64,000 bases of DNA, taken from positions 62,001 through 126,000 of the IMG/VR virus record IMGVR_UViG_3300017917_001123. One strand, given 5' to 3'. The notes beneath the pieces are model-generated. The model had not been told where the DNA came from. It searched no databases and worked only from the letters and a program-made list of their open reading frames with translations. Both the position numbers and the translations under genes were made by a program. Positions 752 to 59,421 of the stretch are shown here, piece after piece (positions within the stretch are counted from its first letter, which is position 1; every line of letters starts with the position of its first letter).

Positions 752-781
752 TTGACTTTTATCTTAGCAGTAAAGTATAAT
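752..781 (+). promoter_or_regulatory. sigma70-type early promoter
   Basis: TTGACT-18 nt-TATAAT, followed by SD AGGAG and ATG 806. Confidence 0.75.
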
Positions 782-4154: not shown

Positions 4155-4183
4155 TTGACATTGACCAATTTTCTAAATATAAT
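4155..4183 (+). promoter_or_regulatory. consensus sigma70 promoter with overlapping TAAATA late box
   Basis: TTGACA(4155-60)-17 nt-TATAAT(4178-83); TAAATA at 4174-79; SD AGGAG downstream. Confidence 0.8.
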
Positions 4184-6919: not shown

Positions 6920-7497
6920 TGAACTTTATAGCAGAATACCAATTGAGCGACACAACTGTTTGTGACGCTCTTTTGGAACTTTTTAAACAAGCACATCAAC
7001 AAGGTTTTACCAAACCTGGTATAGTTGGGTTTGGAACAAAAGAAACTCCAGAAGTAAAGCGTAGCACAGATCTTTACTTGCCAGACGCTGACAGTTTGGG
7101 CTCTCCTGCTAATTTTCGTTTTCCGGAATATAACAACGATTTAACCAAATTCATTGACAATTATTGTATAGAGCGTAAAATATATAACTACTGCGGAAAA
7201 TTTGAAATGCGCTATGCGCCACAAATACAATGGTACAAACCAGAGGAAGGTTTTTATCAGTGGCATATAGATGGAGGTCAAGAACTTTGCGAAAGAGCTT
7301 TAGTTTTTTTAACTTATCTGAATGATGTTGAAGACGGTGGAACTGAATTCTTAAATCAAAACTTAACTGTTAAAGCAGTTAAGGGTAAGACAATTATTTT
7401 TCCAACTGGACTTACACATATACATCGCGGACAAGTTTCAAAAACTCAAGACAAATATATTTTAACTGGCTGGCTTTATTGGGATAACACAAAGTAA
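6919..7497 (+). CDS. 2OG-Fe(II) oxygenase (prolyl-4-hydroxylase-like)
   Basis: WHID...YLNDVEDGGTEF...HIHRG...KYILTGW (HxD...H facial triad, 2OG-binding Lys); TAATG-coupled to dpdA. Confidence 0.9.
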   Translation: MNFIAEYQLSDTTVCDALLELFKQAHQQGFTKPGIVGFGTKETPEVKRSTDLYLPDADSLGSPANFRFPEYNNDLTKFIDNYCIERKIYNYCGKFEMRYAPQIQWYKPEEGFYQWHIDGGQELCERALVFLTYLNDVEDGGTEFLNQNLTVKAVKGKTIIFPTGLTHIHRGQVSKTQDKYILTGWLYWDNTK

Positions 7498-9778: not shown

Positions 9779-10557
9779 AGATTGGAATCGTCGGCGCCGG
9801 ATTTGTAGGTGGCGCAGTTAAAAATGCCTACGATACGTTTCAAGTACCTGTTTTGGTACACGATCCTGTTAAAGGATTTGTTGCCAGCTGGGAAGAACTT
9901 AAAACCTGTGATGGCGTTTATGTCTGCGTCCCTAGTCCCACTTCCGATACCGGCGAGTGCGATACAAGTATCTTAGAAGATGTTCTTAAAAATCTAGCAG
10001 GTATGGAAGGTGTTATTATTAGTAAAGTAACAGCACCTCCGGGTGTTTATTCTAAACTACAAGTAATCTACCCTAATCTAGTTCACGCACCAGAGTTTCT
10101 TGTTGCGGCAACTGCTAACGAAGATTATATCAATGGTACTTTTGCCTACATCGGCGGTGCTGAAGAATATTGTCAAAAGGCTGAAGCAGTTATCCGTGCT
10201 AGCCAACCAAGTTTGACAGATGTTACTTACTGTACCATTACCGAAGCAAGCCTAGCAAAATACACCATTAACAGTTTCCTAGCTACTAAGGTTGTGTTTA
10301 TGAATCAAATTTATGATCTAGCACAGCAACTAGGTGTAAACTTTAACTCGCTAACCAACATGCTTCTAAGCGAAAAGCGTTTTGGCAACAGTCACATGCG
10401 TGTTCCTGGTCCAGACGGAAGCAGAGGTTTTGGCGGAGCATGTTTTCCTAAAGATACTGCCGCACTAGTCTATGAAGCAGAAAGAGCAGGAGTTGATTTT
10501 TCCTTACTTAAGAGTGCTATCAGTGCTAATAAAAAGCTACGCGGCCTTGACAAGTAA
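9775..10557 (+). CDS. UDP-glucose/GDP-mannose 6-dehydrogenase-family protein lacking the C-terminal domain
   Basis: GxGxxG (GAGFVG), CVPSP, KVTAPPG, PEFL, EASLAKY, GFGGACFPKD (catalytic Cys); ends at 260 aa. Confidence 0.88.
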   Translation: MKIGIVGAGFVGGAVKNAYDTFQVPVLVHDPVKGFVASWEELKTCDGVYVCVPSPTSDTGECDTSILEDVLKNLAGMEGVIISKVTAPPGVYSKLQVIYPNLVHAPEFLVAATANEDYINGTFAYIGGAEEYCQKAEAVIRASQPSLTDVTYCTITEASLAKYTINSFLATKVVFMNQIYDLAQQLGVNFNSLTNMLLSEKRFGNSHMRVPGPDGSRGFGGACFPKDTAALVYEAERAGVDFSLLKSAISANKKLRGLDK

Positions 10558-10576
10558 ACCTAAATATTAGTATAAT
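10547..10576 (+). promoter_or_regulatory. sigma70 promoter with TAAATA in the spacer (folE)
   Basis: TTGACA(10547-52)-18 nt-TATAAT(10571-76); TAAATA at 10561-66. Confidence 0.75.
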
Positions 10577-10615: not shown

Positions 10616-11311
10616 ATGAGTGAAAAAAATTTAGCGCAAGCAATTAGAGAAAACATGAGACGCAACGGAAAGCGTTTCTGGGCTGGCGACAATATCAGCG
10701 AATACGTAGACGAAAATGTTCTCCCCGAACTGGTAGACGAAGCAACAGAAGCGTTTGAAAAAGTGTTGGATGCGTTGTTAATTGATCGCGAAACAGATCC
10801 TAATAGTAAGGGCACAGCACGTAGACTGGCCAAAATGTACTTTAACGAAATAATGGCAGGAAGATATGCCCCAGCACCAGACGCAACAAGTTTCCCTAAC
10901 GATTCGGAGGACCGCTACGAAGGTATGTTGGTTGTTCGCAGTGAGCTTCGCAGTATGTGTAGCCATCATCACCAACCCGTTACTGGTGTTGCCTATATTG
11001 GTATTATTGCGGCTCAACACCTCATTGGCCTCTCTAAGTACACAAGGATTGCCCAATGGTGCGCCCGACGTGGTACTCTCCAGGAGGAACTTGCTAATGA
11101 TATTGCTCGCGAGATCGCCAAAGCCACAGGAGCAAAAGACCTAGGAGTTTATATTCAAGCCACGCATGGTTGCTGTGAAAATCGTGGCATTATGGCACAT
11201 AGTTCTTTAACACAAACAACTGTATTACGTGGTGCGTTTAAAGATGATCCAGGCACAAAGAAGGAATTCTTTGACAACATTAAACTCCAACAAGAGTTTG
11301 CTCCAAGATAA
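10616..11311 (+). CDS. folE: GTP cyclohydrolase I
   Basis: SMCSHHHQP, IGLSKYTRI, LQEEL, HGCCENRG (Zn ligands Cys/His/Cys). Confidence 0.95.
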   Translation: MSEKNLAQAIRENMRRNGKRFWAGDNISEYVDENVLPELVDEATEAFEKVLDALLIDRETDPNSKGTARRLAKMYFNEIMAGRYAPAPDATSFPNDSEDRYEGMLVVRSELRSMCSHHHQPVTGVAYIGIIAAQHLIGLSKYTRIAQWCARRGTLQEELANDIAREIAKATGAKDLGVYIQATHGCCENRGIMAHSSLTQTTVLRGAFKDDPGTKKEFFDNIKLQQEFAPR

Positions 11312-11711: not shown

Positions 11712-11929
11712 ACCCAGATAGCGTTATGTACGAAATGTTTGACGGATACGTTACTATGTCGTCCGTTGATGCTCAACATGAGTGGATGAACCGATATCGT
11801 ATTGACGCTATCCGGATGGGCCGTATGTGTGAAAAGTTCCCAGCTTTACAAAAGTCATGGGACGATTTTAAATTAATCTACGAAATTTGCCGGAGTCAAG
11901 ATGACATCGATCGACAAACTCATAATTAA
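11708..11929 (+). CDS. hypothetical protein
   Basis: GTGA overlap; SD GGAGG. Confidence 0.65.
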   Translation: MNPDSVMYEMFDGYVTMSSVDAQHEWMNRYRIDAIRMGRMCEKFPALQKSWDDFKLIYEICRSQDDIDRQTHN

Positions 11930-12458
11930 CCAATCTCACTTTAACAGTCTTGTAAGTAAAATTTGCAGAGACATTACTGTTAGTGGTTGGAGACCTGACT
12001 ACATTGTTGGAATTACACGGGGAGGTCTTCTCCCTGCTCTTATGATGAGTCACTACTTTAATGTCCCGTTACATACACTAAATGTAAGTCTACGAGATAA
12101 TACAAATATAGGACCTGAATCAAATTTATGGATGGCCGAGGATGCGTTCGGTTACGATAGCAATCCAGAAACTTCAATTAAATCTAACGCAGATCTTAAA
12201 AAGAAAATTCTTATAGTAGATGACATTAATGATAGCGGAGCAACACTTAACTGGATTATGAAGGATTGGCAGTCTGGATGTTTACCTAATCAAAACGACT
12301 GGAATTATATCTGGAATAATAATGTAAAGTTTGCTGTAATTGTTGATAACCTAGCTAGTAAGTGTGATGTTAAAATGGACTTTGTTGGCATGGAAGTTAA
12401 TAAAGCAGAAAAAGATGTATGGGTTGATTTCCCATACGAGGATTGGTGGACAAAATGA
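11901..12458 (+). CDS. type I purine phosphoribosyltransferase (Gpt-like)
   Basis: IVGITRGGL, PRPP-binding ILIVDDINDSGATL, C-terminal WVDFPYE. Confidence 0.9.
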   Translation: MTSIDKLIINQSHFNSLVSKICRDITVSGWRPDYIVGITRGGLLPALMMSHYFNVPLHTLNVSLRDNTNIGPESNLWMAEDAFGYDSNPETSIKSNADLKKKILIVDDINDSGATLNWIMKDWQSGCLPNQNDWNYIWNNNVKFAVIVDNLASKCDVKMDFVGMEVNKAEKDVWVDFPYEDWWTK

Positions 12459-12658
12459 AATTAGTAAGACCCGGAACACGATGGTGGGATGGCACAAATA
12501 AAAGGTTTCTCGTACTCGCTGTAGTCGAAACAGACGATGGACATACATGGGTACATTACAGAGAAGACAAAGGAATAAAAACTCCAGCAACGGACTGTAA
12601 AGAATATAGCTGTTACATTGAGAGTTTTGAACAAAGATTTAGAAGCTTACCAGAATGA
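12455..12658 (+). CDS. small hypothetical protein (DUF1653-like pattern)
   Basis: ATGA overlap with the PRTase stop; all-beta pattern ending FEQRF. Confidence 0.55.
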   Translation: MKLVRPGTRWWDGTNKRFLVLAVVETDDGHTWVHYREDKGIKTPATDCKEYSCYIESFEQRFRSLPE

Positions 12659-13026
12659 CAAGATTAGAAGGATTCGTACAAAAGGGTTGGGGACACGAAT
12701 TAATTTGGTGTACCACTGACAAATACTGTGGCAAACTTTTGAAATTTAACAAAGGTGCCAAATTCAGTATGCACTTCCATGCTGAAAAAGATGAGACTTG
12801 GTTTGTCCTAGATGGCAAGTTCGAAGTGAAGTTTATCGACACTAAAGACGCACATCAAGGAAGCGCAATTCTTAATCCAGGTGATACGTGGCATAATCCG
12901 CCACTATTCCCACATCAAGTTATTTGTCTAGAAGAAGGTACTATCATCGAAGTTAGTACGCCCGATTCAATTCAAGACAACTATCGAGTAATGCCCGGAG
13001 ATAGTCAACGTGAGAGTAATGGTTAA
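12655..13026 (+). CDS. cupin (sugar-phosphate isomerase-like)
   Basis: KGWGHE, SMHFHAEKDETW, HNPPLFPHQ, EVST. Confidence 0.85.
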   Translation: MTRLEGFVQKGWGHELIWCTTDKYCGKLLKFNKGAKFSMHFHAEKDETWFVLDGKFEVKFIDTKDAHQGSAILNPGDTWHNPPLFPHQVICLEEGTIIEVSTPDSIQDNYRVMPGDSQRESNG

Positions 13027-13411
13027 CGGCACCTTTGATATTGTCCATAGAGGACATATCGAACTACTAAACTACGCAAAAAGTCAAGGCGATTTTTTGC
13101 TAGTTGCCATTGATACAGATCGTAGAGTTAAAGAACTCAAAGGAGAAAAACGTCCTATTAATAATCAATGGGACAGGTGGTTTTTGCTTGATAACCTACG
13201 AGCTGTAGATACTGTTAGATTTTTTGATAGTAAAGAAGAGCTAATAGAGATAATGAAAGAATACAAACCAGATGTCTACGTTAAGGGCGGGGATTGGAAA
13301 CGAGACAAGCCTGGTACAGCAGAACAATATTGTGATAAAGTAATTTACTATGACAGAGTCGGTTCATATTCAACAACCAAAACCATTGACGATATTATTA
13401 ATCGGGGATGA
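13010..13411 (+). CDS. nucleotidyltransferase, HldE/RfaE domain II-like
   Basis: NGTFDIVHRGH (HxGH), KG..RPIN, VKGGDW, STT. Confidence 0.88.
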   Translation: MRVMVNGTFDIVHRGHIELLNYAKSQGDFLLVAIDTDRRVKELKGEKRPINNQWDRWFLLDNLRAVDTVRFFDSKEELIEIMKEYKPDVYVKGGDWKRDKPGTAEQYCDKVIYYDRVGSYSTTKTIDDIINRG

Positions 13412-14120
13412 TTGCCTCGACGTCTACCAATTCGGTAGCGTAGATCGCATTTCGCCCGAGGCGCCTGTTCCCGTCTTTAAGTACGGGCGGAATGAAACTG
13501 TAGGCGGAATGGCACGTAACGTGAAGCGCAATCTAGAAGAACTAGGTTGTATTGTTACTTACATGTGCGGACAAACAAGTGTTAAGACACGCCTTATCGA
13601 CCAAAGATCAAAACAACATGTTCTCCGCGTAGACAACGACAATCGCAGTCAACCCCTATTATTTGAAGACATTCCATTCAACCTAAATAGTGCTAATCTA
13701 GATGCTATTGTAGTGTCTGACTATGACAAAGGTTATGTTAGTTACGAACTAATCGAAAAACTAATTGCTAATTTTAAAGGACCTGTATTTGTTGATACAA
13801 AGAAAACAGACTTAAAGCGATTAGAAGGCGCATACATTAAAATCAATGAGCTCGAGTATAGTAAATTGATTACTAAATGCTCAGGAATTATTGTTACACT
13901 AGGAGAAAAGGGTGCTCGTTACAACGACGTAATTGTGCCGGCTCCTAAGGTAGAAGTTAGTGATGTTTGCGGAGCAGGAGATACCTTTTTATCTGCTCTC
14001 ACATATAGATATTGCCTAAGTAAAGATATTATAGATGCTATGGAATTTGCGGTTAAGGCAAGCTCTATAACAGTACAGCATCTAGGAAATTACGCACCAG
14101 CGTTAGGAGAATTAAAATGA
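13350..14120 (+). CDS. PfkB sugar kinase, HldE/RfaE domain I-like
   Basis: GDDCLD..RISPEAPVP, GGMARNV, VSDYDKG, KINE, DVCGAGDTF. Confidence 0.9.
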   Translation: MTESVHIQQPKPLTILLIGDDCLDVYQFGSVDRISPEAPVPVFKYGRNETVGGMARNVKRNLEELGCIVTYMCGQTSVKTRLIDQRSKQHVLRVDNDNRSQPLLFEDIPFNLNSANLDAIVVSDYDKGYVSYELIEKLIANFKGPVFVDTKKTDLKRLEGAYIKINELEYSKLITKCSGIIVTLGEKGARYNDVIVPAPKVEVSDVCGAGDTFLSALTYRYCLSKDIIDAMEFAVKASSITVQHLGNYAPALGELK

Positions 14121-14446
14121 AATTTGGTGGATGGGATGTAGGCGGAAAAGTTGTTAAACAAAGTGACGTCTACACAGTAAAAGATAATACAGCATTAAAA
14201 AATTTAATCGTTAGTTCAACAACACTACATCCGGGCAAGAGTACATCCGGGCATAGCCACGCAGGCCAAGAAGAAGTTTATCAATTTATTCGAGGCCAAG
14301 GAAAGATGACTTTAGATAATGAGACCTTTAATGTCTACCCAGGTGATGTAGTGTTAATTCAAGACGGGGTGTTTCATCGTGTTCATAACACCGGACATGA
14401 AGACATGTACTTTGTTTGTGTTTTTGATGGGAAGAGGAATCACTAA
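14117..14446 (+). CDS. cupin domain protein
   Basis: GHSHAGQEEVY...GDVVLI..GVFHRV. Confidence 0.85.
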   Translation: MKFGGWDVGGKVVKQSDVYTVKDNTALKNLIVSSTTLHPGKSTSGHSHAGQEEVYQFIRGQGKMTLDNETFNVYPGDVVLIQDGVFHRVHNTGHEDMYFVCVFDGKRNH

Positions 14447-14856
14447 TGTTTAAACAAGACAATCATATTTTTAAAGGCATACCGGACGATATCGAGGATA
14501 GCAAGGCTCCGTGGACTGAACTTATTGCTGAAGACTATCATGTAAAAGTTTTCAAAGACAAATATCCCTGTACGCCCGGGCACTTGTTGTACGTGCCTAA
14601 ATATAACACCTTAGGAGTTTTAAGCGATGCGTTTGAAGATGCTGTTAGATACGGTAAGACAATGGTGGAAGCCGGAGAATGGGACGGTTTCAATGTTGGA
14701 CTTAACTATGGCGAAAGCGCAGGTCAAACTGTGCCTTGGCCTCATATTCATCTTATCCCGCGCAGAAACGGCGACGTCAAAGATCCGATCGGCGGTGTTC
14801 GAAACACGATCCCGGGCAAAGGAAACTATCGCTCTCCGGACTATTCAAACGATTAA
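14446..14856 (+). CDS. HIT family nucleotide hydrolase
   Basis: DKYP..PGHLLYVPK, AGQTVPWPHIHLIPR (first triad His replaced by Trp). Confidence 0.85.
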   Translation: MFKQDNHIFKGIPDDIEDSKAPWTELIAEDYHVKVFKDKYPCTPGHLLYVPKYNTLGVLSDAFEDAVRYGKTMVEAGEWDGFNVGLNYGESAGQTVPWPHIHLIPRRNGDVKDPIGGVRNTIPGKGNYRSPDYSND

Positions 14857-14908
14857 ACCAGCAACTTTTACTTATAACACAAGTGGAAATATTGGAATAG
14901 GAAACACC

Positions 14909-15223
14909 ATGCCACCTGCAGGTCAATTTGTTTTTAAATCGTACGAAAAAAGTATTTTAACTATAACTGCCGACGGTGATGTAATTTGGAACGGCAAACC
15001 GAGTCAAGCCGCAGAGGTTTTGGTTAAAAGTTTCCAAATGGCTGTTGAAGATAAAAAGGGTGTTACCAAAGCGGCCAAGCGTAGGTATTATTATCAAGCC
15101 TGTAAAAATATTCTAAATAAAGCTGAAAAAATGGAACATAAGGAGTTTATTGACTTTCTCCAAAAGCAAGTGTATAATAGAGAACGTAAAGTCATTATTG
15201 ATAGTTTAAAAGGAGATTCATAA
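14909..15223 (+). CDS. hypothetical protein
   Basis: ATG 14909 with SD AGGA; start uncertain (frame is open back to 14627 across HIT). Confidence 0.6.
   Translation: MPPAGQFVFKSYEKSILTITADGDVIWNGKPSQAAEVLVKSFQMAVEDKKGVTKAAKRRYYYQACKNILNKAEKMEHKEFIDFLQKQVYNRERKVIIDSLKGDS
15150..15178 (+). promoter_or_regulatory. intragenic sigma70 promoter for the CDGSH-queE pair
   Basis: TTGACT-17 nt-TATAAT inside the preceding CDS. Confidence 0.6.
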
Positions 15224-15384
15224 TGCAAGTAAGAGCTTCAGCAGATGTAGGTAAGTGCGGTTGCGGTCGTAGCCCAACTGGTAAATGTATCGGATGGCAT
15301 GGCCTAACCGAAGACGAGTTTAAGAAAAAACTCGAGGAATATAAACTTACTGAACAAAAAGCTACAGGAACTCCAAGTGAGTAA
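15223..15384 (+). CDS. CDGSH/NEET-type [2Fe-2S] miniprotein (53 aa, absent from the ORF track)
   Basis: MQVRASADVGKCGCGRSPTGKCIGWHGLTEDEFKKKLEEYK...; C-x-C-x2-S-x4-C-x-G-x-H; SD AGGAG; TAATG coupling; overlaps the queE start. Confidence 0.75.
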   Translation: MQVRASADVGKCGCGRSPTGKCIGWHGLTEDEFKKKLEEYKLTEQKATGTPSE

Positions 15385-16234
15385 AATCAAAGTCGCAGAG
15401 CTGTTTTACAGCATACAAGGAGAAGGACGCTTTATGGGCGTTCCTTCTGTCTTCTTACGTACATTTGGTTGTAATTTTACATGTGCCGGATTTGGCATGC
15501 CAAGAGGAGAACGAAGTGTTGAAGCAGAAAATATTGACGCATCTAAGTACACCGAGTACAAATCGCTTCCTTTGGTATCTACAGGTTGTGATAGTTACGC
15601 TTCTTGGGATCCTCGCTTTAAGCATCTATCTCCCCTTCTGGATACTACTGCGATTGCCGATGCTATTGTGGATACGTTACCTTACAAGGAATGGCGGGAC
15701 GAACATCTCGTAATTACAGGTGGCGAGCCTTTGCTAGGTTGGCAACGTGCTTATCCAGACTTGCTTAATCATCCTAAGATGACTAGCTTAAAAGAGCTAA
15801 CTTTTGAAACAAACGGTACAATGCGTTTGACAAAAGATTTTAGACATTTCTTGCTAGACTGGACACTAAGCCCAGTTCATGGTCGAAGAGGTTACAATGC
15901 CCTTACATTTAGTGTAAGCGCAAAACTTCCTTGCTCAGGCGAACCGTGGGAAGATGCTATTAAGCCAGAAGTTGTTTGTGACTACGAACAGGTTGGTTAC
16001 ACATACCTTAAGTTTGTTATTGCTTCAGAACAAGACGCACTAGATGCCGATCGTGCCGTAGAAGAATATCGCAAGGCAGGATTCAACGGTCCTATCTATC
16101 TAATGCCAGTCGGCGGCGTTGAAAGCGTTTATGCTCTTAACAATCGTCGTGTAGCAGATCTCGCTATGAAGAAGGGCTATAGATATTCCGATAGATTACA
16201 AGTTCCGCTCTTTAAAAACGAGTGGGGAACTTAA
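15377..16234 (+). CDS. queE: 7-carboxy-7-deazaguanine synthase (radical SAM)
   Basis: ELFYSIQGEG, FLRTFGCNFTC...GCDS, VITGGEPL, FETNGT, LKFVI, YLMP, RLQ. Confidence 0.92.
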   Translation: MSKIKVAELFYSIQGEGRFMGVPSVFLRTFGCNFTCAGFGMPRGERSVEAENIDASKYTEYKSLPLVSTGCDSYASWDPRFKHLSPLLDTTAIADAIVDTLPYKEWRDEHLVITGGEPLLGWQRAYPDLLNHPKMTSLKELTFETNGTMRLTKDFRHFLLDWTLSPVHGRRGYNALTFSVSAKLPCSGEPWEDAIKPEVVCDYEQVGYTYLKFVIASEQDALDADRAVEEYRKAGFNGPIYLMPVGGVESVYALNNRRVADLAMKKGYRYSDRLQVPLFKNEWGT

Positions 16235-20011: not shown

Positions 20012-20080
20012 AAATACAACACTTTTTTGGTAAACTACTTACCAAAATTTATTGACTTCTAACAGAGTCGGCGCTATAAT
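20005..20080 (+). promoter_or_regulatory. sigma70 promoter preceded by two palindromes
   Basis: GTTGTA-AAAA-TACAAC (20005-20), TTTTGGTAA-N5-TTACCAAAA (20025-47), TTGACT(20052)-17 nt-TATAAT(20075). Confidence 0.75.
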
Positions 20081-21253: not shown

Positions 21254-21282
21254 TTGACTTATTGGTAAAACGAGTATATAAT
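21254..21282 (+). promoter_or_regulatory. sigma70 promoter
   Basis: TTGACT-17 nt-TATAAT; SD GGAG before 21314. Confidence 0.75.
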
Positions 21283-25740: not shown

Positions 25741-27846
25741 TTAATATTTAATGATAGGTAAGAGCGCCACGTTACGTGGTCTTGTTTCATCGCCGCCTGT
25801 CGAGTGCATAAAGTTTCCTCTACCATCTCTGTAACAAGTAGAACCATCTGGTTCATCTGGGCTATGATAAATGTTTGGTCCGGACCAGTCAACTTGCGGG
25901 AATCCGTATTGATCGTGACTACCGCCCTGTTCTTGGCTCAGTGTTACACCGTGTTTGTGAGATCTAAATGAATCACCTTGCGATGTACCGACAGTTCTTC
26001 CGCCATCAATGCCTCGACCTTGGTCAGCACCGCGAATAAATTCGCCACGCAAATCTGGTAGATTAAATGTGCCGCCTGCTCCGCCGTATGTATAACCAAT
26101 CGCGGCAAATAAGGCAGGATATGACGCTGTTGATTTAGCAGAGCCATCACAGACTAAGAAACCGCTCGGCGGTGTACTTGCCGCATGGTAGAATACTGTT
26201 CCTGCTGGAACAAACTCTAAACCATTAATACTACCTTGTAAAGAACTTTGAACAGCATCAATTAAACTAAGTAAGGCGTTCTTTGTGGCATCGACGTATG
26301 CCTTAACTGCTCTTTGAGTAGGCAAACGAGAATCTGAGTTAGCAGTTAGTTGAGCATCACGATCAAAACGTGATATTGAGTTAGCAAAACTATCTAATAA
26401 CTGATTAACTGTAGCACTTAAACTACCGATATTAGCAGTATCAGAAACTATGCTAGAAGAATAAACTGTATTGTACGATGACTGAGGCGATCCAATGTTA
26501 TACACTTGGTCCTGTGTAGGAATAATTGAGCCGTCTAAAGTAAGTTCGCCTGTTACGTTTAACGTAGTAAACGGATCTGCAGCAGAAACGCCGTTAGTAT
26601 AAATTGTACTAAACTTTCTTCCTGAAGACCCAATATCGTTACTACCGTCTGTTTGAGGAATAAATTCAATTCCAGAAGCTAATTGCCAATTTCCTTTAAT
26701 AGTACCTTGGTCAGCGCCAGAGTTTAAACCAAATGCATAAACATTCTTCCAACGCAACGCAGGAGCGCCTAAATCATTTCCGTTATCAGAAGCAGGTGTA
26801 AATTGACTCGATGCTTCAACTTGCCAAGAGCCAATAATGCTTCCTGATGCTAGAGCAGAGCCTGCGTTAAGATTTTTTGTATATACGTTATTAAATCGTT
26901 GTCCTGCTGAACCAATACTTTGACTTTCATTTGCGTTCGGATTTAACGAGTCTCCGTTGAACGTTAACGAGCTTCCGTTTGATGATAATGTAATAACGCC
27001 GTTACCGTGTTCAATAACAAGTTTATCAGGGAAGTTTCCGCCCTGCTCTTGGAATGAAATTTTACTATGACCAGCACTTCCAAACTGGAGCATATAGTTA
27101 TTATCAATGAACCAATTTCCTGTAATGTGCTCGTCTTGATCACGTCTAGGGTATGTCTCGTCTAACTGTTCGTGTAACCCATGAAATACTACATCAGTTG
27201 ATGTTGTTGAATAACGAGTACTCGGACTGTAATTCTTTAGAGTTAATCCTCTGTAAACGTATCCAAAACCTATAGATGATGCTTCAACGCCTCCCATAAA
27301 TGTTTCGCTACTTAGAACGCCAATTACTTCGCCGTCTAAAATAATTTTAATAACAGGATGCGGATTTAGACCGTTGTCTAAAAGTGTTTCAGAACTTAAT
27401 TTTGTTTTTCCAAAACCAGGAACTGCTTCTGGGCCGATTAGTGTGTAAGAAGATCCTGTGTTAATGAATAATTGCTGTTTTTCGGTGTTAAACCAAAAGT
27501 CTCCGGGGGCTTGACTTGAAACTATTGCTCCACTAGCAATCGATGTATCAGTTGTGGTATTAGAAAATAAAGTAACAGACAACGGGCGCCATGTTCCACC
27601 GTCGTAAATCATAGGTCTCATTACATTAGCAGACTTGTCATACCAGAGCTGACCTGCTAATGGACTTGCTGGCGGAGTTTCCTTAGAAAAGTTTTCTAAT
27701 AGATATAAAAAGTTTTCGTTTTGTTGAGCGCCATAACCAGATACGTTCTTACCAATTAAATTAATAGACAACGTTGTGTTGTCAATGATATAATCATCTA
27801 AGGCAATTAGCGCCGAACCGTCTGATTTATAAATGTTGTATGCCAT
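25741..27846 (-). CDS. tail fibre with tail-collar domain (gp12-like tip)
   Basis: Same N-terminal domain; collar PAGTV..PPSGFLVCDGS..YPALFAAIG..FNLPDLRGEFIRG; HKH metal motif; ETRPRNVALL. Confidence 0.85.
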   Translation of the reverse strand: MAYNIYKSDGSALIALDDYIIDNTTLSINLIGKNVSGYGAQQNENFLYLLENFSKETPPASPLAGQLWYDKSANVMRPMIYDGGTWRPLSVTLFSNTTTDTSIASGAIVSSQAPGDFWFNTEKQQLFINTGSSYTLIGPEAVPGFGKTKLSSETLLDNGLNPHPVIKIILDGEVIGVLSSETFMGGVEASSIGFGYVYRGLTLKNYSPSTRYSTTSTDVVFHGLHEQLDETYPRRDQDEHITGNWFIDNNYMLQFGSAGHSKISFQEQGGNFPDKLVIEHGNGVITLSSNGSSLTFNGDSLNPNANESQSIGSAGQRFNNVYTKNLNAGSALASGSIIGSWQVEASSQFTPASDNGNDLGAPALRWKNVYAFGLNSGADQGTIKGNWQLASGIEFIPQTDGSNDIGSSGRKFSTIYTNGVSAADPFTTLNVTGELTLDGSIIPTQDQVYNIGSPQSSYNTVYSSSIVSDTANIGSLSATVNQLLDSFANSISRFDRDAQLTANSDSRLPTQRAVKAYVDATKNALLSLIDAVQSSLQGSINGLEFVPAGTVFYHAASTPPSGFLVCDGSAKSTASYPALFAAIGYTYGGAGGTFNLPDLRGEFIRGADQGRGIDGGRTVGTSQGDSFRSHKHGVTLSQEQGGSHDQYGFPQVDWSGPNIYHSPDEPDGSTCYRDGRGNFMHSTGGDETRPRNVALLPIIKY

Positions 27847-34778: not shown

Positions 34779-37700
34779 TTAAATTCCTTCTAGCGGGTTC
34801 TCGTCTTCGTCAGTTAAAACAGCGCCTGTTTCAAGTATAATGATTGGGTCGCCTGGGTAATAATCTTCGCTTGGTAAAACTCCAGGAGTTTCTTCCAAGA
34901 ATGAAAAGACCGTAGTATTTTCAAATATCTGTCCAGTTCTCTTTGAGACAAATACTTCTACTCCGGGCTGTACATTAAATCCAAAATGTAGTACTGGATA
35001 TTCGTTATTATTAATTATCACAGAACTCATTGTGAATTGGGCGGATACGGTACTTGTGCTTGGTGTTCCGAACGAATCGTTTTGTCCAGAATCGTAAGCA
35101 ATTTCTGTATCGGTTGTAACAACAGCGTTTGAAGTCGGTTTTAACAACGGAACTCCGCCGTATAAAACTTCAAACATGTCAGTTAAAGGAGGAGCATCTA
35201 ACAACTTAGCAATTCCTGTAGTAGGATCTACCCAAGTTTTTGTTACTGTTCCAGAAACTGTAATTGATGTTAGAGTATAGACATTTGTAGTAACTGTTGA
35301 AGTAAATCTTTCAATCTCTGTTGTATCTGTTGCTGGCAGATTTTGTCCACGGCCTTGATCAATTACAAGTGTTCCAGTTGGAAGCCCATCTAATACACCT
35401 GTACCAAGTGTGCCTCTTCTTAATTGGCTTAATTCATTATTAGCAACTCTAAAGAACTCAATGCGTTCGCCGGCAATATAAACAACTCCCGGAAGATTCT
35501 TTTCAGGATTTGGCGGAGTTAATACTCCAGCATTATCTACAAAAATCTTAGAGTCGGTTGCAATTAACGGTTGAGTTAACTTTGTTGAATATGCCGAGCT
35601 TAAACGCTTGTAGCTTGTTCTTCCTAAAATGTCTGTAAACATTCTATAAGAAATTGCTCCTTTGTATGCGTTGTCTGATAGGCTCATAATTACAACCTTA
35701 TCAGTAGAACTATTGTAAAAATCATCTCTAACTTTTACAGTAACGAGGTCTTCATCTACTGAGTAGTCTAAGTCATTAATTAATGGCTTACCGTTATATT
35801 CAACCCAAACATAATTCGTATTAACAATTGGACGGCTCATGACGTATTTGCCTGCTCTGTTTCCAGCAAATCTTTCTTTGCGAATCTTACTACCATCGTG
35901 GTTAGTAAATGTAACAACTCGCATAGTATCAGCGCCGGCTTGAGCTCGGGGAACGTTAACAAGAACCAATTGTCCTGCTTCTATTTTATATTGGTGTCCA
36001 GAAAGAACCGCAATAGCAATAGCATCTCCAGTAGAAACTTTCTCTGCCGGGAACAGTACTCTAGTTGGAGGAGGAGTTAGTTGGAAGTCAACTCCTGGAA
36101 CCAATTTTTCACCGTTACGATATACTTCGGTGTTTACTAAAGTTGCCTGACCGGCAATTAACGGATCGTTGGGGTCTACATCAAATTCAACCTGACCCGG
36201 TTCAACAACATAGTAGCTTACCTGTGGCGGAAGTAATCTGCGGCCATTCCACTCAACAATAACTTGGCTATGATGCGGTTGGATAACTCCAGGGGGTTGA
36301 GATAGAGTAAATGAGTCTTGTTGAATATTAACGTTTTGGAATATTTGCTCATGAACCTGACTAAACGCTTTAGGATCTTGATTAAATGCCCAAACTTGAA
36401 TTTCTTTTGTACCAATGGTGTTATGTAAAACTCTAATAGCACCCTTAGGTGTTTTGTTTTTTGCTCGACCAGGTGCGGCTTCAACTACAAAGTCTGTCCA
36501 CTCAGTACCGTTAACTACAACATACGCATCCTTAATGTTCTTAAGGGCAACGGCAGAGACAACAGTAGTCGAAGTAGAACCCGGCTGACTCTTAACAATT
36601 TGGTAGTCAACTAATCCTTGACCCCCAAGAGTCATAGCAGAAACACTTAACCAAGTTGCTCCAGGAACAGCCTGTGTTAGTGTAATTGTGTTAGCAATTG
36701 GGTTAACTGTGTAATCAACTGCGTATCTTAGAGGCTTAACATCTGTAAGAACAAATACCGATGCTGTACTAGCAACTTTAATGCCTAATGGATATGTTGG
36801 GCTACCGCCTAGTTCGAATCGACGATTAACAATTAATGGACTTGCTTCTGATTTTTGCTCAAATACAGAGATACCAACAGACTCTTGAATTTGTCCAGGA
36901 AGCATTTCTTCAGGAGCATAACTGCTTGTTGGGTCGATGAACTTATATCCGTCAATAACAATATCGCTCGGAGCAATACCAAGAATTACGGAGTCTAAAT
37001 CTCCTCCAGATATAACAGCATCTAGAGCATCAGGATCCGCAGGAAGAACAGTTCCATCACTAGATTGATCACGGAATGTGATAATGTTAGACGATACTGT
37101 ACTAAAATATGTTAATGGAACATATACTGTCGACGTCGAACCTTGACCAACAATAGTCGGAATTACTGCGGTGCTTGTACTTTGATCAATACGAACATTT
37201 ACACCAGTTCCTGTGTTTATATAAACATTAATAAACGTTCCTGTGCTAACATTAAAAGGTGTTGTAACAGGAACATTACCGTCTAACAAGAATAAAACTT
37301 GATTATCTAAAGAGTTCTTTCTTGAAGTCCAATATCCCAATTGTCCCTGAGCTTGTGCTAACTGGCTTAACAAATATTGATAGCCAGGATTTGGCACAAA
37401 CTGATTTGGGCCCACTGGAATAAATGGTGATGTAACTGAAAGATCTTGATTAAGTTGATTAATTCTAGACGTCCAGAACCCAACTTCAAAATCTGCGTTT
37501 GCGGCTTGAGCTTGTAAGTCAACTAGTTGACTAGCGTAACCTAGTTGTGGATCTTTAACTACACCATAGTTTGTTTCGCTAGCATAACTGTCCCACGCTC
37601 CTTCCCACCATTTTAAAGTATCCCAAGCACTAGAATAGCTGAAAGGTAGAGTATCGACTTTAACTCCGCCATAGCTTAAACCTGTCATTAACTGGTCAGG

Positions 37701-40700
37701 ATCTTTGCCAGGCATTCCTGGTTCTGGGGCATAGTAGTTTTCAATTCTATCAATAGCGTTGAATATTTCTACACTCTTCTTATATTCTAATGTTAAAGTA
37801 ATATTCTTTACAGGAACAAAAGAAAGGACCAATCTAGCATACTTCTTGCTATATGTCAATCCGTTAGTATTAGTAAAGTCTTGCTCAAAATATTCGATTG
37901 TAAATTTATCGTTTAGAACCAAAGAACCAGCTTGAGTTAACTTAATTCCATTTCTATCAGGCTGAGGTACCCATGTTAATAAGAACTCATAAGTAGAGCC
38001 ATCGCCTGTAAATTGATCAACAACATTAACATTCTGAACTTCTTTATTGTAAGAAATTCTATCAAACTTTAGAGTCAAGTTGTTTGCTCTAACTTTTCTG
38101 TTGCCTAATCGAGCCGATGCTCTTGCTTGTTTTCCTCCTAATCCTAGGCCGCCTTCTAATACAATAGTCGGTGTTACGGTGTATCCTGTTCCAGGATTTG
38201 TTACAGCTATTTCGTAAACTTTGCCTAAACTAATATATGCTTCAGCAGTTGCCCCAGTTCCAAAATCTCCAGGCGCTGGAATGATTTTTACAACAGGTGG
38301 CACAATGTAATCTGACCCTTGATCAACCACTACAATGCTATCAATAAAATTAGTATAGTTGTCAAACCAAGCACGATAAGGATACTGTAATACCTGAGTG
38401 CTTGTTGATGATAAAGAAATAAACTTATTGTTAACTGAATCATAGTACGGTGGTAAGTCAAAGTCAGACACAAACGTATTTGTATCGTCAACTGCTCCAT
38501 ACTTAACGGTAAAGTTTCTTATCTTAGTGTGATAAGGTTTAACTTCGTTGATCCAGTCCTCGTAATAAGAACTGTCTTGTAGTTTATATGTAGGACGCTG
38601 ATCTAAAAGACCAGCATTGTTTGTTACGTTAATAAACGAAGTTTTAAATGCCCACTCTAAAGATTGTTGTTCTTGTAAAGCATACTTGACGGCTTTGAAG
38701 AAGAACTTATTCCAATAAGGTTTTAACACACCAACAAATAAATCATCTTTGATCGCACGTAAGATGTAAACTAGCTCTTGGTTAATGCTTTGGTCAAACA
38801 ATGTTTGGTCAAATGCCGCAACTTCGTCAAACGCATAGTCTGTTAACGTATCATTCCAAATCTTGTCAACAATTTGGATGGTTCCTTGTTCTTCGTAGAC
38901 TACATCCCAGTTCTTATCCCAAGTACCGACTGTGCCTGTTTCTGTCTTGCGAACAACCATAAAGGTGCCGTTGCCAGAATTTTTAACTTTAACATACTCA
39001 CCTGCTGATACATCTAAAGAGGTTAGCTCATACGGTTCAGTAACAGTATCGGCAAAGTCCTGTAAAGGATTATAAGAATCTGCTTGCCAATCTACATATT
39101 TCCATAATAGACGTGTATCGTATTTTTGTGTTTCAATACGAATCCACTCTTTAACTTCTTGATCCCAAGCAAACTTTGTCCAAAAGCCGTTTGCCGCTTG
39201 GTCTGCTTGAACAATTACGGTGTATGGTCGCACAACTAGTTTAGGAACTGAAGTAAATCCGCGGCCTGCGCTTTCGACATAAGCACCTGTAATTTGACCA
39301 ATGTCGTTGACGATTGTCTTAATAACTGCGTCAAAACCAGTACCTTGAATTTCGACTGTAGGCGGTCTTTGTGAGTTGTAACCGTTTCCTGATTTAGTTA
39401 CTACAACTTTATCAATTTGACCATTTTTAGTAATTGTACAAGCTAGCTCTGCTTGTTGTAGGCCTCTTGTAATGATAGTCGATAAAACGTAGTTGTCTTC
39501 AACTATTACATCATATTCGTTAAGCAACTCGTCAGGTATTTGATCAAACGCATTTAAGTTATCAAAATCACATAACTTAACTACACGCTCCTTTAAAAGA
39601 ACAGAGTTTGTCCAAGTAATAAGATTTCGTAATGCCTCTAGTCTGTTAACAAACATACTTTGACGAGGTCTAATTGAAATGCCGTAACGCTGATTAGCTG
39701 ATAAATCTGTATCAGGAACTGTATTTCCTATAGCGTCAAATCCAGATAAACTATCAATTAACTTACGCTCAAGTAGTACAGGAGGTACGCTGAACTCGTC
39801 GTTTTCTTGTAACAACAGCCATTCAGTATGGCGCGGTGCCGATTCAGCAACGGTATCAATGTTTAGATGTAGGTTAACATCGGATGACTGAATAGTTTCT
39901 TTAATGTTAACTAAAGAAATACTATCTTTGTTTAAAACGTTGATTGCTTTAACATTCTGTCCTTTAGGATCAGCAATTAAACCAGCAACACCCAATGCGC
40001 TCAAACGGCGGCCGACTGCTTCAGCAGGAATGTTTACTTTGTTCTTAACCCAGTAGTAATAAACGTTTGTGAATTGCTGAGTGATTGAATTGTAGACTTG
40101 TTTGATACTTAAAACAGAATTGTCTGGATATCTTGGTTGGCCACTAATACCTTTAATCAAACCTTCGTTAGTATCAGCAATAGCCGACCATTCGCTTGGT
40201 AGATATTCAGAGCGGACCCATTCATATACATTAATAGAGCTACCAGGGAATGTAGTGCCCCAGTTATTCTTGCGATAATCTAAGTCGCCTTGTTCGTACC
40301 AAATGTACTTAACTGATCCAGTATCCCACCACAACTGACCAACATTATCGTCAATCCAGTTAGTGTTAGAATCAACTGTTACACCAGAATTTCCTAGACT
40401 GTAGACCGCAGGGTCAAACATAGTTTTATATGTTAGCTCTTGGTCGGCAGCGCCGGAAATTTTACCTTTCATTGGGTCGATGATTGACAAGTAGTCTTGA
40501 ATTCTATCGTGCTCAACATCAATTGTAAATGCTTTCTTGAGAGCGCCAATATCAATTAAACTATCTTGTTTTCTAATTTCAGCCCAGCTGTTTAGCGAAG
40601 TATCTTGTTTAACAAAGATTAAAATTTCTCCGTTGTTTGGACCATCTTCTGTGGTAGCTGTCGGAGCTCCAACATACAAGTGATCGTTAGACTGAGCTAT

Positions 40701-59352: not shown

Positions 59353-59421
59353 TATTTAACCTGGTAAATAAAGTACCAAGATAATAAAAAGTCTTGACTT
59401 GTTATTATTTTCTGTTATAAT
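59353..59421. promoter_or_regulatory. divergent promoter region: back-to-back TAAATA boxes plus sigma70 promoter
   Basis: TATTTA 59353-58 (- strand late box); TAAATA 59365-70 (+); TTGACT 59394-99 with extended -10 TGTTATAAT 59413-21. Confidence 0.7.

What the first reader, a model, noticed from the sequence alone, without database searches (positions are those of the whole stretch)
15150..15384. Unannotated 53-aa CDGSH [2Fe-2S] protein coupled to queE, with its own internal promoter
Seen: ORF 15223-15384, below the track cut-off, has CGCGRSPTGKCIGWH (3 Cys + 1 His), a strong SD, and a stop overlapping the queE GTG; a TTGACT-17-TATAAT promoter sits in the upstream gene. Established: CDGSH/NEET domains hold redox-active, transferable [2Fe-2S] clusters, and radical-SAM QueE needs a [4Fe-4S] cluster and a one-electron reductant (normally flavodoxin). 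Inference: a dedicated phage electron donor or cluster donor for QueE.
Basis: partly seen in the sequence, partly recalled or inferred. Interest (0 to 1): 0.6.

Follow-up and report, generated by a model that had tools for sequence, protein, structure and literature searches.

The report
Minimal CDGSH-like phage miniprotein beside queE
The 53-codon gene is real and belongs to a large, undescribed family of tiny metal-binding proteins derived from CDGSH iron-sulfur proteins, found in aquatic phages and bacteria, but its position next to queE is a local arrangement and not evidence of a dedicated QueE helper.

Summary

The gene is real. Its family has 667 clusters at 50% identity, all 42-103 aa. 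C12, C14, C22 and H26 are invariant, and third codon positions vary ten times more than first and second.

No Pfam, NCBIfam or PHROG model hits it, and it breaks the CDGSH consensus: the loop is one residue shorter, D is replaced by I, and S by W. Even so, family members are 45-52% identical over their full length to phage miniproteins with a canonical CDGSH motif that reach Pfam's cut-off. It is therefore a divergent, stripped-down CDGSH derivative.

The QueE link holds only in one clade. Elsewhere the gene lies 0.3-92 kb from queE, sits next to unrelated genes, or stands alone in bacterial chromosomes. One 83%-complete phage has it without queE.

The promoter is credible. The window has nine near-consensus sigma-70 sites, all on the coding strand, against about 0.9 expected.

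Metal identity and function remain untested.

The parts
15150..15178 (+). Sigma-70-type promoter-like site, TTGACT-17-TATAAT, inside the 3' end of the upstream ORF and 44 nt before the miniprotein ATG.
   Evidence: It matches 11 of 12 positions. It is one of nine such sites in the window, all on the + strand, against 0.93 expected per strand. Eight of the nine, this one included, lie 23-57 nt upstream of an ORF start. It is conserved at the same position in L002, L020 and L168-L172. The -10 hexamer also encodes V-Y-N of the upstream protein, so coding constraint confounds that conservation.
15210..15215 (+). Shine-Dalgarno sequence AAGGAG, 7 nt before the ATG.
   Evidence: Read directly. AAAAGGAGA is invariant in the eight clade relatives checked.
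15223..15384 (+). Gene for a 53-aa miniprotein: a CDGSH-derived 3Cys-1His knuckle followed by a charged helix.
   Evidence: It is single-copy in the 331,570-bp virus record.
15256..15300 (+). Codons for the putative metal-binding knuckle, from C12 to H26 (CGCGRSPTGKCIGWH).
   Evidence: C12, C14, G15, P18, G20, C22 and H26 are invariant in 150 diverse members. Synonymous codons vary freely at these positions.
15377..15384 (+). 8-nt overlap between the miniprotein stop (TAA 15382-15384) and the queE start (GTG 15377).
   Evidence: The same -8 overlap occurs in L170-L172, and a -4 ATGA overlap in L002 and L020.
15377..16234 (+). QueE-like radical SAM gene (7-carboxy-7-deazaguanine synthase type), 285 aa.
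   Evidence: It matches phrog_2076 'QueE-like radical SAM domain' at E 4.3e-51. It is 48% identical to the QueE of Synechococcus phage BUCT-ZZ01. Pfam Radical_SAM and Fer4_12 match only below threshold.
14627..15223 (+). Upstream ORF of unknown function that holds the promoter. Its start is uncertain.
   Evidence: It is 198 aa from the first ATG, which overlaps the HIT gene (14446-14856) by 230 nt. Relatives are called at 134-166 aa and L002's at 228 aa. Homologues were found only in the clade that has the queE coupling.

Best explanation
The ORF is a real early gene of a T4-like jumbo phage. It encodes a stripped-down derivative of the CDGSH iron-sulfur domain: a 15-residue 3Cys-1His knuckle (C12, C14, C22, H26) followed by a capped, charged helix. 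It lacks the beta-sandwich elements of full CDGSH domains.

The most likely working model is inferred, not shown. The four invariant ligands would hold a metal centre, most probably a labile, redox-active [2Fe-2S] cluster as in CDGSH proteins. Such a small protein would probably need to oligomerise through its helix. It would act as a free-standing, general redox or iron-sulfur module, not as a subunit of any one enzyme.

The family is shared between aquatic phages and aquatic Proteobacteria. In this phage clade the gene is the first cistron of a sigma-70-type early transcription unit and is translationally coupled to queE. That guarantees co-expression with a [4Fe-4S] radical SAM enzyme, but the juxtaposition is specific to this lineage.
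For: Real gene under protein-level selection.

Homology to CDGSH:
- Phage miniproteins with the canonical motif score 26.5-30.7 bits against PF09360, cut-off 29.5. L158, L159 and L160 pass.
- L158 is 52% identical over 73 aa to family member P0190 (62 bits, E 3e-20). It is 45-50% identical to P0097, P0123 and P0155.
- These proteins share N-terminal and C-terminal segments outside the motif.
- P0148 carries one CCGWH module and one literal CDGSH module.
- hhalign puts all four ligands in register with a one-residue deletion (P 3e-4 and 1e-3).
- The nearest named ESM Atlas cluster is a viral zf-CDGSH cluster, at a score of 0.84.

Iron or redox company in other lineages (unquantified, no background rate):
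- A translationally coupled rubrerythrin, 63-aa ORF, rubredoxin, miniprotein string in L173, L175 and L011.
- 2OG-Fe(II) oxygenases just downstream in several lineages.

Not specific to QueE. Stand-alone bacterial copies.

Early operon. T4-like gene content.
Against: - No metal binding has been measured.
- The CDGSH signature is altered at positions that are conserved in the family: the loop is one residue shorter, the conserved Pro is shifted, Asp is replaced by Ile, Val or Cys, and Ser by Trp.
- The N-strand and the lid-proline motif described for CDGSH domains (PMC3174974) are absent.
- The Pfam model does not match, and direct profile-profile probability is only 22-38%.
- A column-shuffle control reached the observed hhalign score in 1-3 of 150 trials.
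- The AlphaFold2 model is of moderate confidence (pLDDT 73) and matches no solved CDGSH structure.
- CDGSH domains were first annotated as zinc fingers (PMC5859297), so zinc remains possible for this variant.
- The evidence from iron or redox neighbours is anecdotal and was not tested against a background rate.
Confidence: 0.5

Rival explanations
1. Same ancestry, different chemistry. The CIGWH variant has lost the Fe-S cluster and uses the 3Cys-1His site as a structural zinc knuckle. The miniprotein would then act by binding a protein or nucleic acid, for example as an early host-takeover or regulatory factor, through its charged helix.
For: - The loop is shortened by one residue, and the Asp and Ser of CDGSH are replaced by hydrophobic Ile and Trp in nearly all members.
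- The beta-sandwich elements that shield the cluster in CDGSH domains are missing (PMC3174974).
- The protein sits among early genes behind a sigma-70-type promoter, as many small T4-type takeover proteins do.
- Its neighbours are highly varied.
Against: - The gene is also a stand-alone gene in bacterial chromosomes, which argues against a phage-specific takeover role.
- In one lineage it is coupled to rubredoxin and rubrerythrin.
- Canonical CDGSH and CIGWH loops interchange within otherwise 52%-identical proteins. This suggests the two loops are functionally equivalent.
- None of six miniprotein-bearing bacterial genomes has a canonical CDGSH gene, against 56 of 101 in a phylum-wide sample. 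This is a weak hint of replacement, not corrected for phylogeny or genome size.
Confidence: 0.27
2. One reading: a dedicated electron donor or cluster donor for the phage QueE, forming a functional pair with it.
For: - The stop and start codons overlap, and a shared promoter is conserved in at least five lineages of the clade: the window, L002, L020, L168/L169 and L170-L172.
- In 20 non-redundant loci QueE lies downstream on the same strand within 4.7 kb.
- QueE needs a [4Fe-4S] cluster and a one-electron reductant, and the in vivo reductant of radical SAM enzymes is still unsettled (PMC11994313).
Against: - Outside the clade the distance to queE ranges from 0.3 to 4.6 kb with other genes in between. 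It is about 75-92 kb in G001 and G004.
- G005, 83% complete, has the miniprotein but no QueE.
- BUCT-ZZ01 has this QueE type but no miniprotein.
- QueE is in reach no more often (7 of 27) than unrelated genes of the same region: FEN 6, PRT 6, orf132 7, orf160 9. This is the pattern expected from plain synteny.
- The phage's own pathway genes are themselves scattered: queD lies about 50 kb away.
- Bacterial copies are not next to queE.
- From general knowledge, CDGSH clusters have potentials far above those of radical SAM [4Fe-4S] clusters, which makes the electron-donor version thermodynamically awkward.
Confidence: 0.07
3. The ORF is not a gene. On this view the conservation reflects a DNA or RNA element, or chance.
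For: The ORF is short. The mRNA stretch 15185-15400 folds better than its shuffles (z -3.4).
Against: - Third codon positions are nearly saturated while the peptide stays invariant.
- There are hundreds of clusters with variable flanks and a conserved start, Shine-Dalgarno and frame.
- There is no Rfam match at E<=1.
Confidence: 0.01

Closest known systems
CDGSH iron-sulfur domain proteins (CISD types 1-7, e.g. mitoNEET; Pfam PF09360 zf-CDGSH)
   Same: - The 3Cys-1His ligand set is in the same order.
- The CxCG(R/x)S start of the motif is shared, as is the Gly between the third Cys and the His.
- A helix starts right after the His.
- There is full-length homology to Pfam-positive phage members.
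   Different: - The motif has 16 positions against the 17-residue consensus: the loop between the second and third Cys has 7 residues instead of 8.
- The conserved Pro is displaced.
- CDGSH reads CIGWH.
- There is no N-strand and no GP-lid motif, and no Pfam hit.
- The minimal bacterial forms start right at the motif and are 47-51 aa long.
- Cluster binding is untested.
Uncharacterised phage zf-CDGSH miniproteins in IMG/VR (L146, L158-L166 type, 57-74 aa)
   Same: They have the same size and architecture (motif plus helix). Some subsets share the same C-terminal LW-D-(G)SCT tail and even the same N-terminus. They are 45-52% identical to members of this family.
   Different: They keep the canonical spacing and the literal CDGSH. 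They reach or nearly reach the Pfam cut-off. Far fewer places were found with the single peptide pattern used: 34 confirmed in IMG/VR, against at least 555 for the CIGWH form.
Rubredoxin
   Same: It is a 45-55 aa iron protein built from two Cys knuckles and serves as a free-standing one-electron carrier. In one phage lineage it is encoded immediately upstream of the miniprotein, with overlapping stop and start.
   Different: It has four Cys ligands as two CxxC pairs and a mononuclear Fe. There is no sequence similarity.
Flavodoxin / flavodoxin reductase (the usual 'biological' reductant used for QueE)
   Different: It is a flavoprotein of about 150-170 aa and is unrelated. Nothing here shows that the miniprotein replaces it.
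SEC-C / zinc-knuckle motifs (CxC-x8-C-H/C)
   Same: From memory, the Cys/His spacing looks similar and the motif is of comparable size.
   Different: No SEC-C or other zinc-finger Pfam family was listed for any of 35 members at E<=10. The homology evidence points to CDGSH instead.

Membership tests
CDGSH iron-sulfur domain (CISD; PF09360) | The 17-residue motif, hydrophobic-C-X-C-X2-(S/T)-X3-P-hydrophobic-C-D-G-(S/T/A)-H (PMC3174974, PMC5859297). | tested here: not met
   The window reads K-C-G-C-G-R-S-P-T-G-K-C-I-G-W-H. The loop has one residue fewer, the Pro lies directly after the Ser, Asp is replaced by Ile, and Ser by Trp.
CDGSH iron-sulfur domain (CISD; PF09360) | Three Cys and one His ligands, conserved and in the right order. 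| tested here: met
   C12, C14, C22 and H26 are invariant in 150 diverse members. All four align with the CDGSH ligands in hhalign.
CDGSH iron-sulfur domain (CISD; PF09360) | A score above Pfam's gathering cut-off of 29.5 bits. | tested here: not met
   There is no PF09360 hit at E<=1 for the window protein or at E<=10 for 35 members. There is none at E<=10 in six phage genomes that carry the gene.
CDGSH iron-sulfur domain (CISD; PF09360) | Profile-to-profile similarity to bona fide CDGSH domains. | tested here: inconclusive
   hhalign gave probability 38% with P 3.3e-4 and probability 22% with P 9.8e-4. Column shuffles reached the observed score in 1-3 of 150 trials.
CDGSH iron-sulfur domain (CISD; PF09360) | Demonstrable homology to proteins that are accepted members. 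| tested here: met
   L158 scores 30.7 bits against PF09360. It is 52% identical over its full length to family member P0190 (E 3e-20), and 45-50% identical to P0097, P0123 and P0155.
CDGSH iron-sulfur domain (CISD; PF09360) | The N-strand and the GP-hydrophobic-X-hydrophobic 'lid proline' strand that complete the cluster-binding module and beta-sandwich (PMC3174974). | tested here: not met
   There is no Gly-Pro pair in the 53 residues. The bacterial forms begin 1-3 residues before the first Cys. The AlphaFold2 model shows only the knuckle and helix 30-48. The Pfam-positive phage relatives match only profile positions 28-48 of 48.
CDGSH iron-sulfur domain (CISD; PF09360) | Binds a [2Fe-2S] cluster. 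| not testable with these tools
   This needs purified protein, with UV-visible spectroscopy, EPR and metal analysis.
Dedicated accessory protein of QueE | Conserved adjacency to queE across the family. | tested here: not met
   Among the 59 non-redundant loci, direct overlap occurs only in the window, L002 and L020. Later look-ups added L168-L172 of the same clade. The 57 downstream ORFs fall into 32 clusters. Of 27 loci with full flanks, 19 have neither QueE nor FolE in reach.
Dedicated accessory protein of QueE | Co-occurrence at genome level, each gene found only together with the other. | tested here: not met
   G005 (83% complete) has the miniprotein but no QueE. BUCT-ZZ01 has QueE but no miniprotein. 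In G001 (98% complete) they are 92 kb apart. The sample of near-complete genomes is small.
Sigma-70-type (T4-like early) promoter | -35 and -10 hexamers at 16-18 nt spacing, on the coding strand, shortly upstream of a gene start, and more frequent than chance. | tested here: met
   The site matches 11 of 12 positions at 17-nt spacing. The window has 9 such sites on the + strand, 0 on the - strand, and 0.93 expected per strand. Eight of the nine lie 23-57 nt before an ORF start. The site is conserved in seven relatives.
Sigma-70-type (T4-like early) promoter | A transcript 5' end a few nt downstream of the -10 hexamer. | not testable with these tools

The most novel reading that the evidence does not exclude
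The CIGWH miniproteins are a new, minimal class of iron-sulfur protein. About 40 residues (a CDGSH-type knuckle plus one helix) would be enough to hold a transferable [2Fe-2S] cluster, probably between subunits. Aquatic phages and genome-streamlined Proteobacteria would use it as a cheap, general cluster or electron shuttle for iron-dependent enzymes such as QueE, 2OG-Fe(II) oxygenases and rubrerythrin. In some genomes it would take the place of canonical CDGSH proteins.
Probability: 0.25. Interest if true: 0.7.

Novelty: new variant of a known kind. Interest (0 to 1): 0.45.

Why it matters
If the knuckle does bind a [2Fe-2S] cluster, this would be the smallest CDGSH-type Fe-S module known. 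It would also show that the beta-sandwich and the Asp and Ser of the signature are dispensable, which is useful for understanding cluster lability in NEET proteins.

It would add an iron-sulfur or redox carrier to the list of auxiliary genes carried by abundant freshwater and marine phages. There are at least 555 IMG/VR places and 667 clusters at 50% identity, none of them annotated.

For annotation, it gives a name and a testable hypothesis to a very common 'hypothetical protein'.

For the original claim, it is a caution. A striking stop-start overlap with queE proved to be a clade-specific arrangement inside a hyperplastic early region.

Tried and rejected
Searches that gave nothing informative:
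- Pfam, PHROGs and NCBIfam scans of the miniprotein gave no family.
- PDB sequence searches with the family profile and with P0148 gave only chance-level hits.
- tblastn against 50,697 cultured-phage records with the window protein, P0190 and P0038 found no family member. The low-complexity filter was on, so this is not proof of absence.
- The first AlphaFold2 run, with 35 sequences, gave pLDDT 62. The second, with 150, gave pLDDT 73.
- Foldseek against PDB gave no match. VIA-align gave a best Z of 3.4, driven by the helix. The ESM Atlas shape search gave nothing related. BFVD returned only unnamed members of the same family.
- Complex prediction for QueE plus the miniprotein returned 'no answer' (score 0.00). 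It counts neither for nor against binding.
- A word search with the CDGSH half of P0148 found a single protein.
- Literature searches for the motif string, and for CDGSH together with phage, found nothing relevant.
- An Rfam scan of 14400-16000 found nothing, so there is no preQ1 riboswitch.

Ideas considered and dropped:
- Chance ORF or nucleic-acid element: rejected.
- SEC-C-type zinc motif: no profile support.
- RiPP precursor: there is no conserved neighbouring maturation enzyme.
- General sigma-70 promoter enrichment upstream of the gene family: only 7 of 57 loci have such a site, against a 15% background. The promoter therefore belongs to this clade only.

Full report
**The observation**

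- A 53-codon ORF runs from ATG 15223 to TAA 15382-15384.
- AAGGAG at 15210-15215 lies 7 nt before the ATG.
- The peptide carries CGCGRSPTGKCIGWH at residues 12-26.
- The GTG at 15377 starts a 285-aa ORF that matches phrog_2076 'QueE-like radical SAM domain' at E 4e-51. The two frames therefore overlap by 8 nt.
- TTGACT-17-TATAAT at 15150-15178 lies in the 3' end of the upstream ORF, 44 nt before the ATG.

**The gene is real**

- A word search found 1311 relatives, none with a Pfam domain.
- An exhaustive profile search of 1.8 billion representative proteins found 667 clusters at E<=1e-3. The 150 listed are all 42-103 aa long.
- In 150 diverse members C12, C14, G15, P18, G20, C22 and H26 are invariant. 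G13, R16, S17, T19, G24, W25, L28 and E30 are nearly so.
- Across 57 distinct DNA versions of the 17-codon core, third positions differ at 0.52 per site and first plus second positions at 0.049. Selection therefore acts on the peptide and not on a nucleic-acid element.
- The gene is single-copy in its genome, a 331,570-bp virus record estimated to be 93% complete.
- No Rfam family matches the region.

**Relationship to CDGSH**

As a strict assignment the CDGSH reading fails.
- PF09360 does not hit the window protein or 35 relatives. It finds nothing at E<=10 in six phage genomes that carry the gene.
- The published consensus is hydrophobic-CXCXX(S/T)XXXP-hydrophobic-CDG(S/T/A)H (PMC3174974, PMC5859297). 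It is broken here: the loop is one residue shorter, the Pro is displaced, Asp is replaced by Ile, and Ser by Trp.
- Direct profile-profile comparison with 37 proteobacterial CDGSH domains taken from genomes aligns all four ligands in register. The probability is only 22-38% (P 3e-4 to 1e-3).
- A column-shuffle control reached the observed score in 1-3 of 150 trials.

Intermediate sequences settle the question of ancestry.
- A scan of IMG/VR with a CDGSH pattern found phage miniproteins of 57-74 aa with the literal, canonically spaced motif.
- Against PF09360 (cut-off 29.5 bits), L158, L159 and L160 score 30.2-30.7 bits, L146 and L163 score 29.0-29.4, and L166 scores 26.5.
- L158 is 52% identical over all 73 residues to P0190 (62 bits, E 3e-20). 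P0190 carries the CGCGRSPTGRCCGWH form and was found by the family profile at E 6e-16.
- The shared parts of L158 and P0190 include the N-terminus and a C-terminal tail containing a further Cys. Both lie outside the motif.
- P0097, P0123 and P0155 are 45-50% identical to L158.
- One protein, P0148, carries a CCGWH module followed by a literal CDGSH module.
- The nearest named cluster in the ESM Atlas is a viral zf-CDGSH cluster. At a score of 0.84 this is a lead only.

I conclude that the family is a divergent offshoot of minimal phage CDGSH proteins. Both kinds of phage miniprotein keep only the motif half of the domain: the Pfam matches cover profile positions 28-48 of 48. The N-strand and lid-proline motif of full CDGSH domains (PMC3174974) are missing.

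**Structure**

- With 150 sequences, AlphaFold2 gives pLDDT 73: an irregular knuckle followed by a helix over residues 30-48.
- No solved structure, Atlas model or viral model outside the family itself matches it.
- This neither supports nor excludes a CDGSH-like cluster site.

**Is it tied to QueE?**

Only locally.

Evidence for a conserved arrangement within the clade:
- Eighty IMG/VR loci plus nine loci from other look-ups were reduced to 59 non-redundant contexts.
- Among those 59, direct overlap with queE occurs only in the window, L002 and L020.
- The closest relatives looked up later add L168/L169 and L170-L172 of the same clade. They have the same upstream genes, the same promoter and the same Shine-Dalgarno.

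Evidence against a tie across the family:
- In 17 further non-redundant loci queE lies 0.3-4.6 kb downstream, with other genes in between. folE lies on either side.
- The 57 downstream ORFs fall into 32 sequence clusters. They include 2OG-Fe(II) oxygenases, a CMD-family protein, a cytidylyltransferase, an alpha/beta hydrolase, a UDP-glucose dehydrogenase, SAH hydrolase and many unknowns.
- Among 27 loci with at least 5 kb on both sides, QueE is in reach in 7. That is no more than unrelated genes of the same region: FEN 6, PRT 6, orf132 7, orf160 9. Nineteen loci have neither QueE nor FolE.
- At genome scale, the two genes are 92 kb apart in a 98%-complete relative and about 75 kb apart in another.
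- A record that is 83% complete has the miniprotein but no QueE match.
- Synechococcus phage BUCT-ZZ01, the cultured phage with the closest QueE, has no miniprotein.

Bacterial copies:
- The family also occurs in bacterial chromosomes: Methylophilales HTCC2181 (on a 1.3-Mb contig), SAR116 single-cell genomes, and gammaproteobacterial and Burkholderiales MAGs.
- There it stands alone between housekeeping genes. Examples are SCO1 and cytochrome c on one side with GST and NadA on the other, or an alpha/beta hydrolase and RelA/SpoT on one side with IspF, IspD and Mfd on the other.
- None of six such genomes has a canonical CDGSH match, against 56 of 101 genomes sampled across the phylum. This is a weak hint of replacement and is not corrected for phylogeny or genome size.

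**One independent hint of iron or redox function**

In another jumbo-phage lineage (L173, L175, L011) the gene ends a translationally coupled string of rubrerythrin, a 63-aa ORF, a bona fide rubredoxin and the miniprotein.

**Promoter and operon**

- Sites matching at least 11 of 12 consensus positions number nine on the + strand and none on the - strand, against 0.93 expected per strand.
- Eight of the nine lie 23-57 nt upstream of an ORF start. One of them (10547-10576, 12 of 12) precedes folE.
- The window encodes a T4-type DNA polymerase, a gp55-like late sigma factor, an SbcC-like nuclease and tail fibres. Sigma-70-type early promoters are therefore expected.
- The 15150 site is identical in seven relatives of the clade. 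However, its -10 hexamer also encodes Val-Tyr-Asn of the upstream protein, so conservation alone is not decisive.
- Across the whole family there is no promoter enrichment upstream of the gene: 7 of 57 loci against a 15% background.
- The miniprotein is therefore most likely the first cistron of an early unit that continues through queE, a 97-aa ORF, a 2OG-Fe(II) oxygenase, a 132-aa ORF and a flap endonuclease. The next such promoter on the strand is at 20052.

**Mechanism**

Shown:
- A conserved, selected miniprotein with an invariant 3Cys-1His set.
- Homology to CDGSH miniproteins.
- A clade-specific transcriptional and translational coupling to queE.

Inferred:
- The four residues bind a metal, most likely a [2Fe-2S] cluster.
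- The protein oligomerises through its helix.
- It serves as a general redox or cluster-carrying module.

Assessment of the alternatives:
- I put about 0.5 on the Fe-S general-carrier model.
- I put about 0.27 on a zinc or structural variant acting through protein binding.
- I put about 0.07 on a QueE-dedicated partner.
From general knowledge, CDGSH clusters sit at much higher potentials than radical SAM clusters. Cluster donation would be the more plausible version.

**Novelty**

- I found no paper that mentions the motif, or CDGSH proteins in phages. Two surveys of the CDGSH domain mention no viruses.
- No cultured phage in the collection carries the family.
- I rate it a new variant of a known kind. 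The family is moderately interesting in itself. The specific QueE claim is weak.

**Limits**

- Metal content, expression and interaction were not testable.
- The complex prediction returned no verdict and is not used as evidence.
- No sequence was taken for human, and no reads were laid.

Noticed in passing
window 752-781, 4155-4183, 7154-7181, 10547-10576, 20052-20080, 21254-21282, 27765-27794, 59394-59421 (+): These are eight further near-consensus sigma-70 promoter-like sites (11-12 of 12), all on the + strand. Seven of them lie 23-57 nt upstream of an ORF start; no ORF start was listed downstream of the 27765 site. Several share an ACATA-like stretch just after the -10 hexamer. They are probably the phage's early promoters.
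   Followed up: partly
window 15470-15589 (QueE residues 32-71): The radical SAM cysteine motif of this QueE reads C32-x3-C36-x34-C71 followed by D-S. That is about 32 extra residues between the second and third Cys compared with the usual CxxxCxxC. This probably explains the weak Pfam Radical_SAM score.
   Followed up: no
window 10616-11311 (folE), 15377-16234 (queE); G000:C1:26724-27245 (queD, outside the window): The phage's 7-deazaguanine genes are scattered. queD lies about 50 kb from queE. QueC matches only below threshold (16 bits, at G000 position 242 kb). No TGT/DpdA-type match was found. The phage may make only CDG and rely on the host for the remaining steps.
   Followed up: partly
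window 11901-14856 (+): There is a run of nucleotide and sugar-nucleotide genes between folE and the miniprotein: a phosphoribosyltransferase, a cupin, a cytidylyltransferase-like gene, a PfkB kinase, a second cupin and a HIT hydrolase. It resembles an RfaE-like sugar activation module. Its role is unknown, and a part in DNA or nucleotide modification is possible.
   Followed up: no
window 14446-14856 versus 14627-15223 (+): The ORF upstream of the miniprotein overlaps the HIT gene by 230 nt in another frame if read from its first ATG. Relatives are called at 134-166 aa, and in L002 the gene caller kept a 228-aa version and dropped HIT. The true start is unclear.
   Followed up: partly
window 34779-48761 (-): There is a single open frame of 4660 aa, lying between ORFs that match tail-fibre and baseplate families. 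It was not examined.
   Followed up: no
L173:2230-3141, L175:1186-2097, L011:5421-6141: In another roughly 337-kb phage, a rubrerythrin, a 63-aa ORF, a 44-aa rubredoxin and the miniprotein form a translationally coupled string.
   Followed up: partly
Relatives P0025, P0038, P0042, P0081, P0099, P0118, P0120; L091: In many relatives the open frame extends upstream into a separate conserved module: Gly/Ser-Lys-x-Arg-Pro, then Tyr/Phe-x-x-Asn-Tyr/Phe-Asp-x-Ile-Phe/Trp. It is either a true N-terminal extension or an adjacent in-frame small gene. The module looks like a widespread phage element in its own right.
   Followed up: no
P0121, P0148; the tail in L002, L020, L055, L066, L069, P0155, P0160 and L158-L166: Tandem two-module proteins exist. 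P0121 has two CxGWH modules, and P0148 has one CCGWH and one CDGSH module. A subset of both loop types shares a C-terminal Leu-Trp-x-Asp-(Gly-Gly)-Ser-Cys-Thr tail with a fifth conserved Cys. The window's protein lacks this tail: it has a 36-nt gap relative to L002 and L020.
   Followed up: partly
G117 (contig of L087), about 2.7-28.4 kb: A 77-kb phage fragment that carries the miniprotein also holds eight ORFs with radical-SAM-core matches within about 26 kb.
   Followed up: no
window 15185-15400 (+): The predicted mRNA folds better than its shuffles (z -3.4). In the minimum-energy fold the miniprotein's GGAG pairs with a CUCC just upstream of the queE GTG. The fold may simply reflect the GC-rich Cys, Gly and Arg codons. 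Its conservation was not tested.
   Followed up: no
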